A DNA stretch of 64,000 bases from Magallana gigas (GCF_963853765.1 NC_088858.1:38502001-38566000), one strand, 5' to 3'; numbered from the stretch's first letter, positions 42,685 to 60,624 are shown. Program-made: numbers and translations. Notes: generated by a model not told the origin, from the letters alone.

Positions 42685-43152
42685 ATGAGTGGCTATTTTT
42701 ACCAGTATATCACAGTGGTTGTCCGAGACTTTATTTTCTTCCATGATGATGTACAGTCCACCACGATTGCGGTAGCCATTGCTAGCTCTCTCTGCTGCTC
42801 CATTGTGTGGGCTATCTGTCACTTGCTGACTTTGGGCTCCTCTTCTGCTTCGTGTAAATCAACCAAAGATAAAAGACCTTCCAATAGAACATCAAACTTT
42901 GCTTGGAGCAAGTCCAAAAGGAGGAAATCTCCCACCAATGTAAGAATGATTGATTGGTTCACTGTTGTTTAAAGTCTGTCCAGGAGTATTTCATTTTAAT
43001 TGCAATGCAAGGTTTCAGGTGTATCTTAAGTCATTTGTCATATTATTTGATGCAATGTTTATTTTTTTGTTACTACCTTAAAAGTCAACAAGTTCTGAAG
43101 ATGATACTGCTTTGGAAGATGACATTGAAGTTCCTTGCATTAAGTAAGTGGG

Positions 43153-43183
<31 letters not shown>

Positions 43184-46100
43184 CTACCACCTTAAAATCA
43201 ATTGTTGGCCATGAAATCTCCATACTGACTTCATTAATTAAGAGATTTTTCATTGTTCCTCCCACATCATCATCTCGTTAGCATACTGCAGTGTATTGTT
43301 TGTTAGTGTTGTAAACCAGCCATCTCTCTAACACAACCTCTAGATCAATGAGTGAGGCTTTGTTTATATTTCATACCTGCACCCCCTTACATCAGTACTT
43401 TAATTAGAAACATTTGCCCCTGGCTGCACAATAACGAGCACCCTGTCATACATCAGATTCAGGCTCATTGATTATATGTGCAGTTATTTTTGTGAGGGGG
43501 TCAAAACCTTGTAATGATTGAGGTGTCTGCTGGAGCAGATCGATAAATAGAAAAATATGTGCACTCCCCTCATTGCTTTATAATGATTGGTACTTGACAC
43601 CGCTTGGAGCTGACTAAGGTTGGATAGAAGTAAAAACTGAAATTTTAGTTGACTCAGCATACGATATAATGTTTTGACCCAATTTGTTAACAGTACACTA
43701 ATGTAAAATCTTGAAGGTGGTAAAAACAAACATAGATACATTTTGAAGGATTATGTAATCTAAGAATCTCTTGCTATTCATTTCAGTTAAACTTTTGCAT
43801 ATTTTTCATTGTTTAAGGTACATTGTCTGTCTAATAAGAAAGATCGTCTGTCTAATAAGAAAGATAACTCTCTCTTGAATAAAAATAAATACATGTTCTA
43901 CATAAGAAATATGCTCTGCAAGGGGTGTCATAATTGTGTAAAATTCAATTAAAATTCATAATTCTTTTGAAAATTGTTACTACAAGTTTTAAATGATGCT
44001 TGAAGAATGATTTTTGATATGACCTTGAGAGATGCTCTTTTTTGTGATGTAGGTGTGGGGAGTACATAGCTGACTACACCTGTAGATTTGTGACCTGTAA
44101 GATTTGCTGCCTGGCCCCCTCATCGTGTACCACTCATCAAGCGGCCGAGAAACGGCGAAGACCTTACAGAATACCCAGAAATGGTGTAACAGAGATCAAT
44201 CTAAGGTGAGATGTCAGCTGTTACTAATGAAATACACTGCAATAATAATGTCATTGTGGCTTATACAACAATATAGATCAAATACAGTCATATGTAGCAA
44301 TATTAATCAACTTACGGTCACTGTCTGCTTTCTCAGTATTACTTATGAAATTTTGCTTACAAGATTGAATGTCACAGGGCTTAAATACAACAATATGGAT
44401 AGATCAATCTACAGCCTCTTGGGAATGCTGAATGTCTGCTTCATGAGAGTTTCCTTGTAATACACTGCAAGACTGAATTTAATGTAGCTTATATGATAAT
44501 AATATAGATCAGATAACAGCCTTTGTTGCTGCTGAAAGACCGCTTCATCTGAGTCACTCTTGTAACATATTGCAAGACTAAATGTCATTGTGGCTTTTAT
44601 AACAAAACAGATCAAAAAACAGCATTTGTGAATACTGCTCAAATGACTGCTTCATCAGTTTTACCTGTGCATATAAAATGCAGGACATCAAGATTGAATG
44701 TCAATGTGGCTTATACAGTTATAGTTCAATTTACAGCCTCTTGTGGATGTCGAATGTCTGCTTCATTATTCGTGTACAAGATTGAATGTCAGTGTAGCTG
44801 ATACAATGCATACCAGTACATGTACCTATAGAGATTGATTTACAGCAACTTGTGGATGCTTAAAGTCTGCTTCATCAGTTTTACTTATAAAATATACTGA
44901 AAGACTGAGTGTCAGTTTGTCCTACATAACACAATATACCAGGTAGATCAATTTACACCCAACCATGGAAGCTGAATGTCTTGAGGGTTAACCAAGAAAT
45001 AAAGACTGACTCCTGCTGGTACAGACTCATTTCTTGGACTTATTGAGCAATACACTACTTAAACCCTCATTGATTTAGTTACAGTTCCTCTGAAACAAGT
45101 AATTTATTAGTCCCCTACTGGTTTCACCGGAGGGGACTTTCCTCTGCATCCGTCAGTCCATCTGTCCATCCGTCCGTTTGTCTGTCCCACTTCAGTTTTC
45201 AACACTTTTTTTCTTTATGCGTTAGAGGAATAATATGAAATTTGCTGAACAGCTTCAAATGTCAACCTATAGATCAAGTTTAAAGTTTTGTAGCGTCTTA
45301 TTTACATATTTTTGAGAAAATTAATTTTTTATATTCCAATTTTTTCATGTTGGGGTTTAATGTGTATTGAAGAAACGAGGAAAGTATGTAGTCAGTAATA
45401 ATATCGTGCATTACTTGTACCATTCCTTTTATTGTTTCTAACAAACAAAAAAGTTCTGTAAGATAGTGTCAAGCATTGTGTTGTAAATTTAATCGACAGG
45501 GTTTTCTGTATTATTACAATCGGGTTTGTTATCAGGTTGGTCTGTTGACTCGGGGTACAGAAGACGGTAAGGAATGATATTCTGCATAACAGTGCATTGT
45601 TTTCACAAATTTCTACCAGCAAATACTTAATGGACTTGGCGAAATTACAGAAGATAAAATAAAGAGTATTGTTTTACCCATTTTTTATTTAATTTCTATA
45701 TCAACTATGTAGTTTGAATTTCCTCTGTTCTTTTATCTCTGATTAAAGCATAGCATCCCGTTTAAAATAGTTTTGAAATAAATGTATGCTTAGAAGCTTC
45801 CATAGAATGATACAAACGGGTAGGGGACTATGCAATACTCTCAGAATGCTTGTTATCTTTAATAGAGACTTATGTGACCAGTGACTAAAAAAAAAAGATA
45901 TTCATTTTGCTTTGCAATTTTTCAAGATAAGATGTAATATACACTGAACACTTTAAATTAAGAACCATCTTTAAAATTTTTAATGTACCATATTGTGATA
46001 TTGTATCCAGATATGTTAGGGTAAAAGCAAATACTAGGATATAGATCATAGACATGCATTTTGTAGAAGGTTGAAGACCGGGTATTGCCTATAGGGAGGG

Positions 46101-52100: not shown

Positions 52101-54439
52101 AACCAAAAAATATTTAAACCTCAAATTAAGTTTTGTCTTGGTATTCTATGTTCCAAATAATGACGGGATATATTGTTTTGTCGAACAGATATTAGTATCT
52201 AAAGACATATAGTCCTCTTTAGAATTGACTAAAAACATCAACGTCGCCGGACGTCACGGCGCAACGACAGGTACAAACAAAATGAATTTAACCGAGATAA
52301 AAGCCGACACAAGCTGTGAAAATGCTCAATGGTGCAAAAAATAAATCAACAATTATTTGCAAGTTTGTGTTTCACTGTAATAAATTTTGTGGGTGTGGTA
52401 ATTGTATTTTGAATATAAAACAATCTGAAAGAGAGTAGAAAATCTGTAAATATTTGGTCAAAAAATAATTAACCTCAACCAACGTTCAGGGTAATCCTTA
52501 CTGTAAACTAATAGATACACGGTTAGAAAATGAAAACTTTGAAGAACTAACTAATGATTCTCGAACAAATGTGTGCAAATAAGATGTTGAGTGGTTCAGT
52601 GCAATTTTAGATTGTAAGGAGAAAGGCAAAAGAGACTAAGCGTGATATAAAGATGGATATATCTTTAAACTGTGCATGTTTAATCTTAACGTCATGTTTT
52701 GAACGTTACCGTGCGCCGTGGTGACAAAACATGTTGTTTTTAAAAAAGGGTAACAAACATACCGTCTCATCAAATGGACTAAAACTTCGCATGTTAATAA
52801 CATAGGTGTTGGTGCACAGATTAATCTGTTAAGTATGACTTTCTTGAAAAATATATGATAGACAGCCACATTGTCTTCGTATTTTTTGATTGACCCTTGT
52901 ATATATGTTGTTCAAGCCAACCATAAACCTCGGACCAATACTGGGTCCCCAGAAAGGGGTTCCACGTTTAAAATAGAAAAAGCATATGCTACAGAATGTA
53001 ATGTTACAAGGAACTGCTGTTCAGGTGAGCGGTGTGGCCCATGGGCCTCTTGTTAAATGAATTTCAGTGCTGTATCAATTTAATATAAAGAAGTACCTAT
53101 GTAATCTTTATTTTAACAGGACAGTATTGGTTCTTTAATCAACTTACGAGTGTTGAAGTTGTCTAATAATTTCATAAAATATTTGCCAGGTGAGTTGTTA
53201 CTGCTCAACTTCTTTGTTTTAAATGCTTGAAATTAATTTCAATGGTACATGTAATACATGTACTGTGGAATCATTAGAATTAGTGGTGGCTCAATTTGTG
53301 TGGTATTTATGGGTAGTCCTCACCTATGAATTTACATCATCGACAAAAACTAATTTCTAGAAGATTTAGTTTTCCTACTGAAACTGAAAGCTGAGACATC
53401 CACGAAATTACATTCCCATGAATAAGCAAAAAACCCACAATCCACCAGAATTGGACCCATGAAATTAAATGATTCCACATATATTTGTTGTGTTTACTTC
53501 ATGAATCTCTGTTTAATTCCATCATTTAAAACACATAGCATATTCATTTCTCTTTCCCTTAGATGGAAAGATCGAGGAATGAATAATTCTACTGTAGGTG
53601 TTTTATGATGTTTAAAAACCATTTTAACAAGAGCTTTGACTGGGTAGTTGTGTCAAACAGCATTGTGACATAGGCCTGTCTGTTTCATTGCTGGCCATTC
53701 AGCCATGGCTCTTTGAAATCAACAATATTTGTCTGGCTTTTGAGCTAAGACTACCAATCGGTGTTTATTTCGCTTGAAATCAGCATCATTTTAACTTGTT
53801 TTGAAGCAAGAAATAGATAGTTAGTCCTAATAAAAGTCCAAGGCCTTGTTAAAATGGTTCTGATCCAAACAAATGAGATAATAGCTGGTGTAAGGTACAT
53901 TTCTCATCCACTAAAAATGGAGTTTCTGGTTGCAGAATCATTAACAAGTTTGTCTAACCTTGTTCAACTTGATGTTCGAAAAAACAAACTACAGTCACTG
54001 CCTGCTGGAATCGGGAGTCTGTTAAACTTAACATGTCTGAAATCAGGGTAGGTGTTCAGATGTAAGAACTGTCAACACGATTTATAAATGATTATGAATA
54101 ATGATTCTTTAGAATTTGTCAGGAAATTTATGGGAGAGTAGTGTGTTTGTTGTCTATAATTTTAATTAGTTAAACCCATTTAGATTCAACTCTGCAAATG
54201 CTGTTTTACAAGTAGGATAAAGAACTGTTAAATTGTAGTGGTTGAATTGACTTATACATGTAGAATTTAAGATCACTTTTTATGTATTTTTGTTTTATTC
54301 TTATGAAACCCAAATGTTTATTTTTTATTGCAGGTCAAATTCAATACAGCACATGCCAGCCAGTTTATACAAATTGAAGAATTTAAAAGTAGGTTAACTT
54401 CACAGAGTCAGATAATTCAACTTGAATTACCAATTCAGG

Positions 54440-54496
<57 letters not shown>

Positions 54497-55590
54497 TAAT
54501 GAAAATTACTTTTAACATATAAAGCTGAGAAAATTGTCATCAAATTAAAAGGTTATACCCTTACATCTACCTGGTATTACGTAATTTATTTTCAACAAAG
54601 GTTAAAATGCTGTTCACATCACATTGTAACTTTCATTTTATTATATATTACATCTGTTCAGAATACTGTGCCAATGAGATAAATCACTTCAGCTTGCAGT
54701 ATTTAGAACATTCTTTACAGGATTTTTTTTCATGTAAATGGTCCATTTTTTAAAACACTTTTACAAGTGTTGCTCCTCTCTTAGATTACAATGAATAAAG
54801 AGCATAGAAATCATTCATAGGTCTTGAAATTTGAGAAGAATAAGATTGACAGTTTGTCAGGAGCTGTCAGTAACTTGCTGGATTTGGAGGATCTGAATTT
54901 GTCACACTGTCAGCTGTCGGCCATTCCAAGAGAGCTGGGTTCCTGTTGTGCTCTCCGAAAAGTTGACATCTCCCATAATAGGTGAAATAGTTTTACAAAT
55001 GGTCTACAAACATTTTTTCATCATAATCACAAAAATAATAAATTTTATGATTATTCTTTAGTCTTATTAAACTGAGAGGAATCATTAGTGAGGAACTAAG
55101 GACTATAGTGTTTGGGGGCTTTATGACATTAGTCATATATTTGAAGTATTTCTTAAATAACACCTGTCAGTGAAAATTATTTGGCTTTGGTTTGGGTATA
55201 AATGCTTACATCTTGAAAATCAAATTTTATTTTGTTTGATTATTCAAATAAGGTTTGCAGAATATGGCAGCCAACAGGAAAAACTCTTTCAAAGATTTTG
55301 AAACTTATTAAACATGCAGAGGTCTTGGTACATATACATGATTTTAAATAGTCAAAAATTTTATAACGTATAAATGTTCTTAAAAAATAATTGACAAGTC
55401 AATTTACAGGTACTTTTATTATATAGGATAATGGTTTTTATTTTCAACAGAATCACTGATTTACCAGCACACTTTGGTCAGCTTAGAGAACTGACCAGGC
55501 TGAATCTGTCGGGGAACAATCTATGGTACATCCCATCCACCCTCCTCCTGAGTACCATCCAAGACTGTAATGGTAGGTGGTGATTGATTG

Positions 55591-55633
<43 letters not shown>

Positions 55634-55744
55634 TGTATTTGGATACATGGCACAGAGAATCATATTTTATACATGTGTTACTCTCTCGGATAGAAAAAAG
55701 GTGAAAGAAAGACAGATAGACAGAGAGATGCATAAAAACAGAAA

Positions 55745-55820
<76 letters not shown>

Positions 55821-56361
55821 ATAGGCATTTCAAGTTGTTTAACTTGTTCTTTGTTAAAGGAGAGACAGAGAATTATGAAAATACATGTAAGTCTGGCATC
55901 ATCATGAAGAAACAGAATTACACGTTGAATGCATAATTCTTAATGCATTTTGATTTTACAGTTTCAGATAATGACTTTATATCAAGTCAACATTCCATAA
56001 AATGTGTTCCCATGGTCTGTAAAATTCCTCCCTTGCTGGAGTTGAGTGCAAGGGCCATTGTTCACAACAATCCACATGACAAGTTAGAGGACTTGCCACA
56101 ATCATTACAAGGTGATAATCTTATCAAATCTTATCACTTTTTAATTTGCGGAGTTTTCTTCAGTAATGAATAGACTTTGCGATGTGGTGTCTAATTTGTT
56201 TTCTATTTGCAGAAATGATCACAAAGAGAAAGTATTGTGTGACTTGCTACAAGCCATGTTTTGTGACTTTCCAAATGTCGTTGACATTCCACCAGTTGTC
56301 CAGTGTCAACATTCCTGTTGTGTCCATTACATGCCCAGCCTGTTCGTCATGTTCATGTTAA
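42685..56361 (+). CDS. LRR protein of 483 aa in 11 coding exons: TM anchor, Cys/His finger, about 10 LRRs, LRRC58-like BC-box/Cys C-terminus
   Basis: Exons 42685-42939, 43085-43143, 44053-44205, 47063-47228, 53120-53189, 53936-54047, 54334-54388, 54821-54981, 55451-55572, 55962-56111, 56213-56361 total 1452 nt. All junctions are GT-AG, phases agree, and 23-residue LRRs run in register across them (e.g. TEINLS|NNDITECP, LTCLKSG|SNSIQHMP, KLKNLK|VLKFEKNKI). A probable 5' UTR exon lies at 42396-42473. Confidence 0.85.
43153..43186. repeat. (CAT)n microsatellite
   Basis: Trinucleotide run just after the donor of LRR exon 2 (intronic). Confidence 0.95.
44220..44990. repeat. Degenerate tandem repeat with a period of about 90-120 bp
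   Basis: The motif caaga(t/c)tgaatgtca.tgtggctta recurs near 44360, 44468, 44573, 44689, 44777 and 44900, usually followed by atagatcaat.tacagcctcttg...gaatgtctgcttcat. Confidence 0.75.
45103..45854 (+). mobile_element. Helentron-associated non-autonomous element (HINE-like)
   Basis: 5' tttattagtcccctac followed by a (gtcc/gtct)n microsatellite. At the 3' end, the inverted subterminal gtaggggacta, a short hairpin and ttgtt. Confidence 0.6.
46826..47039. mobile_element. About 210-bp TA-flanked MITE (Tc1/mariner/pogo-like), copy A
   Basis: TIRs tactgtg(a/g)aatcattt...aaatgattccactgta. An inverted copy lies at 53261-53482. Confidence 0.7.
47229..47770. repeat. 27-bp-based tandem repeat starting at the donor of LRR exon 4
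   Basis: Units of acagttacaaataacatcagctaaata, interspersed with longer units resembling aacattagctcaatacctgtaagtagctg. Confidence 0.8.
48603..48705. repeat. About 100-bp imperfect palindrome inside an insert (about 48432-49450) that interrupts the satellite array
   Basis: tatcgcttacattta.tttgga.accgtgcc.gataa.aat and its reverse complement. Confidence 0.75.
49530..50584. mobile_element. piggyBac-like non-autonomous element nested in a satellite monomer
   Basis: ttaa|ctcttttcccctta ... taaggggtaaagag|ttaa. Removing it restores ggggttcaaagtttaacatagaactacat, the host monomer sequence seen at about 48225-48255. Confidence 0.8.
51841..52899. mobile_element. Mariner-like non-autonomous element nested in the HINE
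   Basis: ta|cgagggtcaatcaaaaaatac ... gtattttttgattgacccttg|ta: 21-bp TIRs with 1 mismatch and a TA TSD. No transposase ORF. Confidence 0.82.
53261..53482. mobile_element. TA-flanked MITE, copy B (inverted relative to 46826-47039)
   Basis: tactgtggaatcatt...aaatgattccacata, with an interior complementary to copy A. Confidence 0.7.
54445..54491. repeat. (TA)n microsatellite
   Basis: Pure run. Confidence 0.95.
55593..55814. repeat. Two (GA)n microsatellites (55593-55630, 55746-55814) in LRR intron 9
   Basis: Pure runs separated by a purine-rich spacer. Confidence 0.95.
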
Positions 56362-57789: not shown

Positions 57790-59654
<1,865 letters not shown>

Positions 59655-60494: not shown

Positions 60495-60624
60495 NNNNNN
60501 NNNNNNNNNNNNNNNNNNNNNNNNNNNNNNNNNNNNNNNNNNNNNNNNNNNNNNNNNNNNNNNNNNNNNNNNNNNNNNNNNNNNNNNNNNNNNNNNNNNN
60601 NNNNNNNNNNNNNNNNNNNNNNNN
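60495..60624. other. Assembly gap (130 N)
   Basis: Run of n characters. Confidence 1.

What the first reader, a model, noticed from the sequence alone, without database searches (positions are those of the whole stretch)
42685..56361. Candidate membrane-anchored cullin-RING substrate receptor: TM + zinc finger + about 10 LRRs + BC-box/Cys tail
Seen in sequence: the spliced protein has a hydrophobic segment (TTIAVAIASSLCCSIVWAICHLLTLG) followed by a basic stretch (KSTKDKR...KSKRRKS), a Cys/His finger, about 10 canonical 23-aa LRRs, then IPPLLELSARAI...DLPQSLQEMI..RKYCVTCYKPCF.....F......IPVVSITCPACS. Established: P-L-x3-[CAS]-x3-I followed by LP..L is the Elongin BC-box/cullin-box layout, and from memory the LRRC58/LRRC28 family ends in this same box plus a two-part Cys cluster but is soluble. 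Inference: this is an LRRC58-like CRL2/CRL5 adaptor that has gained a membrane anchor (C-terminus cytosolic by the positive-inside rule) and an extra metal finger, placing a ubiquitin ligase on the ER or an organelle membrane. I do not recognise this architecture from any described family.
Basis: partly seen in the sequence, partly recalled or inferred. Interest (0 to 1): 0.85.

Follow-up and report, generated by a model that had tools for sequence, protein, structure and literature searches.

The report
Membrane-anchored LRR ubiquitin-ligase adaptor candidate
This oyster gene really encodes one protein with a strikingly conserved membrane helix, a zinc finger, about eleven leucine-rich repeats and a tail related to two proven cullin-ligase adaptors (LRRC58, LRR1), so it is probably a membrane-tethered ubiquitin-ligase adaptor, though no binding has been shown.

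Summary
RNA contigs from three studies and one 1771-nt cDNA contig join 13 exons. The ORF is 483 aa, from ATG 42685 to the stop at 56361. It includes a 59-nt exon (43085-43143) without which the membrane-helix exon would be out of frame.

Sixteen orthologues share the whole architecture. They cover all major bivalve lineages and the brachiopod Lingula. The hydrophobic helix is the best conserved part, at 70% identity against 39% for the LRRs.

A profile of the tail hits human LRRC58 (PDB 9T7V, E 1.6e-8) and LRR1 (E 7e-4 and 2.8e-3). Both are solved Elongin BC-cullin receptors. The tail-only model matches LRR1 best.

The residues that never vary in the tail are the BC-box Leu, the cullin-box P..L and three zinc-site cysteines. 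The same genome also holds a separate, soluble LRRC58 orthologue. This gene is therefore a distinct paralogous family, structurally nearest to the uncharacterised LRRC69.

Not shown:
- Elongin binding. The complex prediction gave no answer.
- Membrane insertion.
- Which membrane it sits in.
- The substrate.

The BC/Cul-box regular expression alone is not specific in LRR proteins.

Verdict: a real gene and a new variant of a known kind. Interest is moderate to high.

The parts
38913..38949 (+). End of one alternative 5'UTR first exon. Its 5' limit is not determined.
   Evidence: cDNA contig L014 block 1. The loose end of the X8 contig maps here and is followed by a GT donor.
39453..39482 (+). 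End of a second alternative 5'UTR first exon.
   Evidence: The loose end of the X9 contig maps here and is followed by a GT donor.
42396..42472 (+). 5'UTR exon. It carries an in-frame stop upstream of the main ATG. It also carries an upstream ATG at 42417 whose 39-codon uORF overlaps the main start.
   Evidence: Joint 42472>42683 in three runs. Translation. L014 block 2.
42683..42939 (+). Coding exon 1 (ATG 42685), residues 1-85. It holds the conserved N-terminal helix, the hydrophobic TM-like helix (residues 26-50, 42760-42834) and the basic stretch.
   Evidence: Hydropathy and flanking charge.
43085..43143 (+). 59-nt coding exon. It holds the acidic linker and the first Cys of the finger, and it restores the reading frame between exon 1 and the finger exon.
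   Evidence: Joint 42939>43085 (GT..AG) in three runs, and contig X2 record 1..
44053..44205 (+). Finger exon. It holds the rest of the C-x2-C-x8-C-x4-C-x2-C-C-x5-C-x2-H finger (to 44137), a linker and the start of LRR 1.
   Evidence: Conservation of the Cys and His residues.
47063..47228 (+). LRR exon (LRRs 1-3).
   Evidence: Joint 44205>47063 in four runs. Pfam LRR_8 hit..
53120..53189 (+). LRR exon.
   Evidence: The loose ends of the X8 and X9 contigs after 47228 read into this exon..
53936..54047 (+). LRR exon.
54334..54388 (+). LRR exon.
54821..54981 (+). LRR exon.
55451..55572 (+). LRR exon (the last LRRs).
55962..56111 (+). Tail exon 1. It holds the BC-box-like helix (56030-56059) and the start of the Cul2-box-like L-P-x-x-L (from 56093).
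   Evidence: Profile match to LRRC58 and LRR1. Helices 409-420 and 431-438 in the model.
56213..56361 (+). Tail exon 2. It holds the end of the cullin box, CxxC (56236-56247), a long two-stranded hairpin (56272-56331), a second CxxC (56332-56343) and the stop codon. The 3'UTR runs on to at least 56563.

Best explanation
The gene, in the Pacific oyster Magallana gigas, encodes a 483-aa single-pass membrane protein.

Architecture:
- A short acidic N-terminus and one hydrophobic helix anchor it. The positive-inside rule puts everything after the helix in the cytosol (inferred).
- The cytosolic part is a basic/acidic linker, a C7H zinc finger of no recognised type, about 11 LRRs and a C-terminal module.
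- The C-terminal module is a BC-box helix, a Cul2-type cullin box, a zinc site and a long beta-hairpin that caps the LRRs. It is homologous to the same module in LRRC58 and LRR1 (shown).

Most likely mechanism (inferred):
- The tail recruits Elongin B/C and CUL2 (possibly CUL5) with RBX.
- The concave face of the LRRs, together with the hairpin cap, binds a substrate.
- The ligase is thereby held at a membrane and ubiquitylates a membrane or membrane-proximal protein.
- The TM helix is nearly invariant. This suggests it does more than anchor, for example by contacting a partner or substrate inside the bilayer.
For: - Transcript structure: the joints appear in RNA contigs of three studies, and a full cDNA contig matches all 13 exons.
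- Orthologues: 16 full-length proteins with the same architecture, from oysters, mussels, scallops, a unionid, venerids, Mya, Solemya and Lingula.
- TM helix: Kyte-Doolittle 19-residue maxima of 1.8-2.4 in 16 of 16. The N-flank is net negative. The C-flank carries net +4 to +10 in 15 of 16.
- Conservation between oyster and non-oyster orthologues: TM 70% identical, LRRs 39%, linker 10%.
- Tail by sequence: the profile hits LRRC58 chain 9T7V_B at E 1.6e-8 over residues 257-339, and LRR1 at 7e-4 and 2.8e-3.
- Tail by fold: the tail-only AF2 model (pLDDT 80) has LRR1 as top hit in AFDB Swiss-Prot (TM 0.57-0.58) and CRL2-Lrr1 7SHK_L as top hit in the PDB. LRRC63, LRRC58, LRRC69 and LRRC28 follow.
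- Invariant tail residues are L409 (BC-box Leu), R415, P430 and L433 (cullin box), C443, C446, C475 and P469.
- The Cul2-box consensus Phi-P-x-x-Phi-x-x-x-Phi lies 12 residues after the BC box in the window protein and occurs, in that order, in 15 of 16 orthologues (consensus from PMC3355856).
- The model's helix-helix-hairpin layout, with Cys pairs at the hairpin base, matches the published description of the LRRC58 tail (PMC13156300).
Against: - No binding evidence. The complex prediction with the oyster Elongin C pieces gave 'no answer'.
- The BC+Cul-box regular expression also matches 54 of 102 unrelated LRR proteins.
- Only 9 of 16 orthologues fit the strict BC-box rule. Several have T or V at position 6, and Ostrea has T at position 10.
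- The nearest whole-fold relatives, LRRC69 and LRRC28, have no published ligase role in the library searched.
- The N-terminal 148 residues fold with pLDDT below 50. The TM and the finger therefore rest on sequence features only.
- No dedicated TM or topology predictor was available.
Confidence: 0.6

Rival explanations
1. It is a membrane-tethered LRR scaffold or regulatory subunit with no ligase function. On this reading the tail is kept only as the structural C-cap and zinc clasp of the LRR solenoid. The conserved TM helix docks the protein on another membrane protein, such as a channel or receptor.
For: - The TM helix is the most conserved region, as expected for a helix-helix contact.
- LRRC69, LRRC28 and LRRC63 share the tail fold but have no reported Elongin or cullin link in the library.
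- Strict BC-box rules fail in 7 of 16 orthologues.
- The complex prediction gave no support.
Against: - The residues that never vary in the tail are the Elongin C-contacting Leu and the cullin-box P..L, not only the zinc ligands.
- Both relatives with solved structures, LRRC58 and LRR1, are active CRL receptors (PMC13156300; PMC3355856).
Confidence: 0.25
2. The hydrophobic segment is not a bilayer-spanning anchor. It could be a monotopic hairpin formed with the N-terminal helix, a buried protein-protein interface, or a targeting signal. The protein would then be peripheral or soluble.
For: - Residues 2-16 are also hydrophobic and conserved, with D15, F18 and F19 invariant.
- The helix is rich in Ala, Ser, Thr and Cys and only moderately hydrophobic in scallops (1.8).
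- AF2 confidence is low here.
Against: - There is one 25-residue uncharged stretch with Kyte-Doolittle above 1.6 in all 16 orthologues.
- The charge asymmetry typical of signal anchors holds in 15 of 16.
- The segment is too long, and its N-flank too acidic, for a cleaved signal peptide (established knowledge of signal peptides, not tested here).
Confidence: 0.12
3. It is a gene-model artefact: the TM and finger exons belong to another transcript or to a non-productive isoform.
For: - The old UniProt model of this gene (P0021) splices differently and lacks several exons.
- A uORF overlaps the main ATG.
Against: - Three RNA runs and a full cDNA contig carry the joints in frame.
- 152 member sequences cluster with P0006.
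- All orthologues have the same N-terminus.
Confidence: 0.02

Closest known systems
LRRC58 (human; PDB 9T7V). CUL2/CUL5-Elongin BC substrate receptor for cysteine dioxygenase CDO1.
   Same: - LRR solenoid followed by a BC box, a Cul2-type cullin box, a zinc-bound loop and a two-stranded sheet that caps the LRRs.
- The tail profile matches it at E 1.6e-8.
- The oyster LRRC58 orthologue aligns through the BC box, the LP and the first Cys pair.
   Different: - LRRC58 has no TM helix and no N-terminal finger.
- It has nine LRRs.
- It has C-x4-C rather than C-x2-C.
- It ends in -VLLG, which is needed for its cysteine-dependent instability (10.1101/2025.09.23.678073). The window protein ends in a Cys-rich stub.
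- The oyster has its own LRRC58 orthologue elsewhere (L007), so this gene is a paralogous family.
LRR1 / LRR-1 (CRL2-LRR1; PDB 7SHK, 7PLO).
   Same: - Best structural match for the isolated tail (TM 0.57-0.58).
- Profile E 7e-4 and 2.8e-3.
- LRRs followed by a VHL-box-like tail.
   Different: - LRR1 is soluble and has an N-terminal PH-like domain (from my own knowledge).
- It has no TM and no finger.
LRRC69 and LRRC28 (vertebrate, functionally uncharacterised).
   Same: - Best whole-model Foldseek matches that run from the first LRR to the end of the tail: LRRC69 with query residues 147-483 and TM-by-hit 0.69, LRRC28 with 152-475.
- NCBI names the Lingula orthologue LRRC69.
   Different: - About 345-367 aa, aligned only from residue ~147 on, so they have no counterpart of the TM helix or finger.
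- Orthology was not tested by sequence or tree, because no LRRC69 or LRRC28 sequence could be handed to the tools.
Lipid-anchored CRL receptors (Rab40 SOCS-box GTPases, FBXL2). Named from my own knowledge, not tested here.
   Same: A cullin-RING substrate receptor held at a membrane.
   Different: Those use prenyl anchors. Here the anchor would be an integral, sequence-invariant TM helix.

Membership tests
Elongin BC-box / VHL-box substrate receptors | BC box (S,T,P)-L-x3-(C,S,A)-x3-Phi (PMC3355856) | tested here: inconclusive
   The window protein fits (PLLELSARAI), and the Leu is invariant in 16 of 16. Only 9 of 16 orthologues fit strictly. The combined BC+Cul2 pattern also matches 54 of 102 unrelated LRR proteins.
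Elongin BC-box / VHL-box substrate receptors | Cul2 box Phi-P-x2-Phi-x3-Phi, 8-23 residues after the BC box | tested here: met
   The motif [LV]-P-x2-L-x3-[LIVF] is present in all 16 orthologues, and P430 and L433 are invariant. It starts 12 residues after the BC box in the window protein. The combined pattern with 8-23 spacing matched 15 of 16.
SOCS-box (Cul5-type) receptors | Cul5 box with L-P-Phi-P | tested here: not met
   The sequence is LPQS. No orthologue has Pro at the fourth position. LRRC58 nevertheless binds CUL5 with a Cul2-type box (PMC13156300).
Elongin BC-box / VHL-box substrate receptors | Physical binding to Elongin B/C and a cullin | not testable with these tools
   The one complex prediction returned 'no answer'. 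It is not counted either way.
LRRC58/LRR1-type C-terminal module | Sequence homology of the post-LRR tail | tested here: met
   Profile A3 against PDB sequences: LRRC58 at 1.6e-8, LRR1 at 7e-4 and 2.8e-3.
LRRC58/LRR1-type C-terminal module | Two helices, then a long two-stranded sheet with a zinc site at its base | tested here: met
   AF2 gives H409-420, H431-438, E455-463 and E466-474. C443, C446 and C475 are invariant. The fourth ligand is Cys or His at 478 in most orthologues. Foldseek top hits are LRR1 and 7SHK_L. Zinc binding itself was not tested.
LRRC58 orthologue | Single orthologous locus, with the C-terminal -VLLG motif | tested here: not met
   A separate gene at G000:C2:24444553-24445990 encodes an LRRC58-like protein ending in -VLLG. 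The window protein ends differently.
LRRC69 orthologue | Reciprocal best match or a common clade with vertebrate LRRC69 | not tested
   Only Foldseek ranking and an automatic NCBI name point this way.
Signal-anchored single-pass membrane protein (N-out, C-in) | One uncharged hydrophobic stretch of about 20 or more residues | tested here: met
   Kyte-Doolittle 19-mer maxima of 1.8-2.4 in 16 of 16. The next-best window is at most 1.7, inside the LRRs or at the extreme N-terminus.
Signal-anchored single-pass membrane protein (N-out, C-in) | Positive-inside charge asymmetry | tested here: met
   The N-flank has 0-1 K+R and net charge -1 to -4. The C-flank has 5-10 K+R in 15 of 16. Solemya is the exception.
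Known zinc-finger families | Match to a Pfam or PDB finger | tested here: not met
   No Pfam hit at E<=1 for residues 60-160. The best PDB profile hit has E 0.34. The Atlas gave nothing.

The most novel reading that the evidence does not exclude
This would be the first integral-membrane Elongin BC-box cullin-RING substrate receptor. It is a lophotrochozoan family (bivalves and a brachiopod) in which a nearly invariant, polar-studded TM helix is itself a recognition element. The helix would read a partner or substrate inside the bilayer, while the cytosolic LRRs and tail bring in CUL2/5. A new C7H finger would sit between the two.
Probability: 0.3. Interest if true: 0.8.

Novelty: new variant of a known kind. 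Interest (0 to 1): 0.6.

Why it matters
Known Elongin BC-box receptors are soluble or lipid-anchored (from my own knowledge). The reviews and survey I consulted for other points described no receptor with a transmembrane helix, though none was checked for that specifically.

A receptor with its own TM helix would show a different way of placing a cullin ligase at a membrane. That helix is conserved more strictly than the catalytic-complex-binding tail, across all major bivalve lineages and a brachiopod.

The work also ties the uncharacterised vertebrate proteins LRRC69, LRRC28 and LRRC63 to the LRRC58/LRR1 tail fold. This gives a testable prediction that they too are CRL receptors.

Practically, public records of this gene family are auto-named soc-2, lap1, LRRC58-like or LRRC69. 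The old UniProt oyster model is mis-spliced.

Tried and rejected
1. My first gene model lacked the 59-nt exon. It made exon 1 terminate after 91 codons, which suggested that the LRR protein started at an ATG formed across the splice junction. The RNA joints overturned this.
2. Single-exon searches found nothing. Pfam gave no hit on the N-terminal and tail exons. PDB phmmer with either tail exon gave no hit.
3. The library-wide search with the last exon gave one true orthologue and two Cys-repeat false hits.
4. Own-genome searches with the last exon and the finger exon found no paralogue. The weak hits L002, L003, L008 and L009 are noise.
It returned 'no answer': 0.36 against 0.25 for a control. 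This is not evidence either way.
6. Motif counting as evidence was rejected, because unrelated LRR proteins match the pattern about half the time.
7. Finger identity: Pfam, the PDB profile search and the Atlas features search were all blank.
8. Whole-model PDB Foldseek is swamped by generic LRR proteins.
9. Literature on LRRC69 or LRRC28 with Elongin or cullins: none found.
10. The search of earlier findings returned nothing near this place.
Full report
**Gene model**

The region is AT-rich animal DNA. The old UniProt fragment of this gene (P0021, Magallana gigas) carries the window's own residues where they differ from P0006, which identifies the genome as Pacific oyster. The window is G000:C6:38502001-38566000 of a 564-Mb assembly.

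Stop-free stretches and splice sites on the + strand gave nine mutually in-frame exons from 44053 to 56361. At first the TM-bearing exon (42683-42939) did not fit. With its strong donor (42940) and the strong acceptor of the next exon (44052), the frame breaks after 91 codons.

RNA evidence resolved this. Contigs of three RNA runs from three studies, plus raw stranded reads of a fourth run, show these GT..AG joints:
- 42472>42683
- 42939>43085
- 43143>44053
- 44205>47063

They then continue into the exon at 53120. The extra 59-nt exon (43085-43143) restores the frame.

The ORF runs from ATG 42685 to the stop at 56359-56361 and is 483 aa long. It is preceded by an in-frame stop in a 5'UTR exon. 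A 1771-nt cDNA contig from another run (L014) aligns to the window in 13 blocks that reproduce every boundary. It also adds a 5'UTR exon ending at 38949 and at least 200 nt of 3'UTR. Its protein, P0006, stands for 152 member sequences and differs from the window's at 4 residues.

**Anatomy** (coordinates)

| Residues | Feature |
|---|---|
| 2-16 | Conserved hydrophobic helix |
| 26-50 | Uncharged TM-like helix |
| 57-84 | Basic stretch |
| 86-100 | Acidic stretch |
| 103-133 | Finger C-x2-C-x8-C-x4-C-x2-C-C-x5-C-x2-H |
| 151-385 | Eleven beta-strands at a spacing of about 23 residues (Pfam LRR_8 E 8.5e-29) |
| 408-417 | PLLELSARAI |
| 429-437 | LPQSLQEMI |
| 443-446 | CxxC |
| 455-474 | Long hairpin |
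| 475-478 | CxxC |

**Conservation**

The last exon alone retrieved an Ostrea edulis orthologue. With that as a handle I found 16 full-length orthologues of 474-510 aa:
- four oysters
- Mytilus and a relative
- three scallops
- a unionid
- Mercenaria and relatives
- Mya
- the protobranch Solemya
- the brachiopod Lingula

All have the same order of parts. Identity between oyster and the 12 non-oyster proteins, by region:

| Region | Identity |
|---|---|
| TM helix | 70% |
| Finger | 52% |
| Pre-TM N-terminus | 47% |
| LRRs | 39% |
| BC/cullin box | 38% |
| Cys tail | 22% |
| Linker | 10% |

The stretch F-F-x-x-D-V-Q-T-T-T-I-A-V-A-I-x-S-S-L-C-C-S-I-V is almost invariant. Every orthologue has exactly one stretch with Kyte-Doolittle above 1.6 over 19 residues outside the LRRs. 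The N-flank is acidic with 0-1 K+R, and 15 of 16 have 5-10 K+R in the 30 residues after it. By the positive-inside rule, the finger, LRRs and tail face the cytosol. No dedicated topology predictor was available, and AF2 is unconfident for residues 1-148. Insertion and topology are therefore inferences.

**The tail**

A profile of the 16 tails, searched against all PDB sequences, gave these hits:
- Human LRRC58 (9T7V chain B): E 1.6e-8, residues 257-339.
- Xenopus LRR1: E 7e-4.
- Human LRR1: E 2.8e-3.

The LRRC58 alignment pairs BC box with BC box, L-P with L-P, and the Cys pairs with the Cys pairs. Both proteins are solved as Elongin BC-cullin receptors.

The LRRC58 paper describes nine LRRs, a BC box and a Cul2-type cullin box. 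It also describes a roughly 30 A two-stranded sheet with a zinc-bound structure at one end and, at the other, a loop that caps the LRRs and touches the substrate (PMC13156300). The AF2 models show the same layout at pLDDT 80-97.

Foldseek results:
- Tail-only model: LRR1 ranks first in AFDB Swiss-Prot (TM 0.57-0.58) and CRL2-Lrr1 7SHK_L first in the PDB. LRRC63, LRRC58, LRRC69 and LRRC28 follow.
- Whole model: the only hits that run through the tail are LRRC69 (best), LRRC28 and LRRC58.

The invariant tail residues are L409, R415, P430, L433, C443, C446, P469 and C475. These are the Elongin C-contacting Leu, the cullin-box P..L and three zinc-site cysteines. The cullin box fits Phi-P-x2-Phi-x3-Phi in 16 of 16 and lies 12 residues after the BC box in the window protein. 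It does not fit the Cul5 L-P-Phi-P (consensus from PMC3355856).

**Caveats on the motif argument**

The combined BC+Cul2 regular expression also matches 54 of 102 unrelated LRR proteins, because LRRs themselves resemble it. It matches 2.5% of shuffled sequences. Only 9 of 16 orthologues fit the strict BC box. The case rests on homology and on which residues are conserved, not on the motif.

**Not LRRC58 itself**

The tail profile finds a second locus in the oyster genome (C2:24445501-24445692, E 1.7e-5). Its exons encode a soluble LRR protein that starts directly with LRRs. It has P-P-T-L-L-E-L, L-P-S-N-L and C-x4-C, and it ends in -VLLG. The same terminal motif is essential in human LRRC58 (10.1101/2025.09.23.678073). 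It is 27% identical to the window protein over the last LRRs and the tail. The window gene therefore belongs to a separate paralogous family. Whether that family is orthologous to vertebrate LRRC69 was not tested.

**What was not shown**

- Elongin binding. I located oyster Elongin C (three exons) and submitted it in pieces with the tail. The verdict was 'no answer', and I do not count it.
- The finger type. It has no relative in Pfam, in PDB sequences or in the Atlas.
- Any prior description. No paper in the library links LRRC69 or LRRC28 to Elongin or cullins, or describes a TM-bearing BC-box receptor.

**Verdict**

The most likely function is a membrane-tethered Elongin BC-CUL2/5 substrate receptor (0.6). 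The main rival is a non-ligase membrane scaffold that keeps the tail only as an LRR cap (0.25). It is a new variant of a known kind. The unusually conserved TM helix and the unclassified finger are the parts most worth an experiment.

Noticed in passing
window 42417-42745 (spliced 42472>42683): An upstream ATG in the 5'UTR exon opens a 39-codon uORF. It crosses the splice junction and overlaps the main ATG at 42685 in another frame. It may act as a translational brake.
   Followed up: partly
window 38913-38949 and 39453-39482: Two different sequences are spliced onto the 5'UTR exon at 42396 in different RNA runs. This points to alternative first exons or promoters 3-4 kb upstream of the reported start.
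   Followed up: partly
window 45100-45860 (intron between 44205 and 47063): A dispersed repeat with very high RNA contig depth (up to about 2700) on both strands. It has many non-canonical joints and loose ends. It looks like a multicopy mobile element transcribed elsewhere in the genome.
   Followed up: no
window 50679-51678, with related copies near 48000-48400 and 49480: A 165-bp tandem array (6 copies, 73% matches) in the large intron. Its copies carry short ORF fragments that recur in the intron.
   Followed up: partly
window 55747-55815, 54444-54491 and 43146-43194: Microsatellites inside introns: (GA)34, (TA)24 and a CAT-type run that starts three bases after the donor of the 59-nt exon. 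Read laying skipped the last one as a repeat.
   Followed up: no
P0021 (UniProt K1PI.., Magallana gigas) against window 42852/44053: The old public protein model of this gene uses a weak donor at 42852 and skips the 59-nt exon and five LRR exons. It gives a 210-aa fragment named 'soc-2-like'. Public names for the orthologues are inconsistent: soc-2, lap1, lap4, LRRC58-like, LRRC69.
   Followed up: yes
L007 = G000:C2:24444001-24447192 (exons at about 553-1030, 1261-1660 and 1795-1989): A bona fide soluble LRRC58 orthologue of the oyster. It ends in -VLLG like the human protein, which suggests the cysteine-sensing tail motif is ancient.
   Followed up: partly
L012 1429-1596; L013 3501-3548 and 3807-3944 (G000:C7, about 8.93 Mb): Oyster Elongin C in three coding exons. 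The third exon's product reads the same as my recollection of the human C-terminus, a comparison from memory that was not checked with a tool.
   Followed up: partly
window 57790-58377 (-) and 22604-23983 (-): Two long ORFs on the minus strand. One is 195 aa and lies just downstream of this gene. The other is a 459-aa Ser/Glu-rich ORF. Neither was examined.
   Followed up: no
window 60495-60624: A run of 130 N (an assembly gap or a mask). Left untouched.
   Followed up: no
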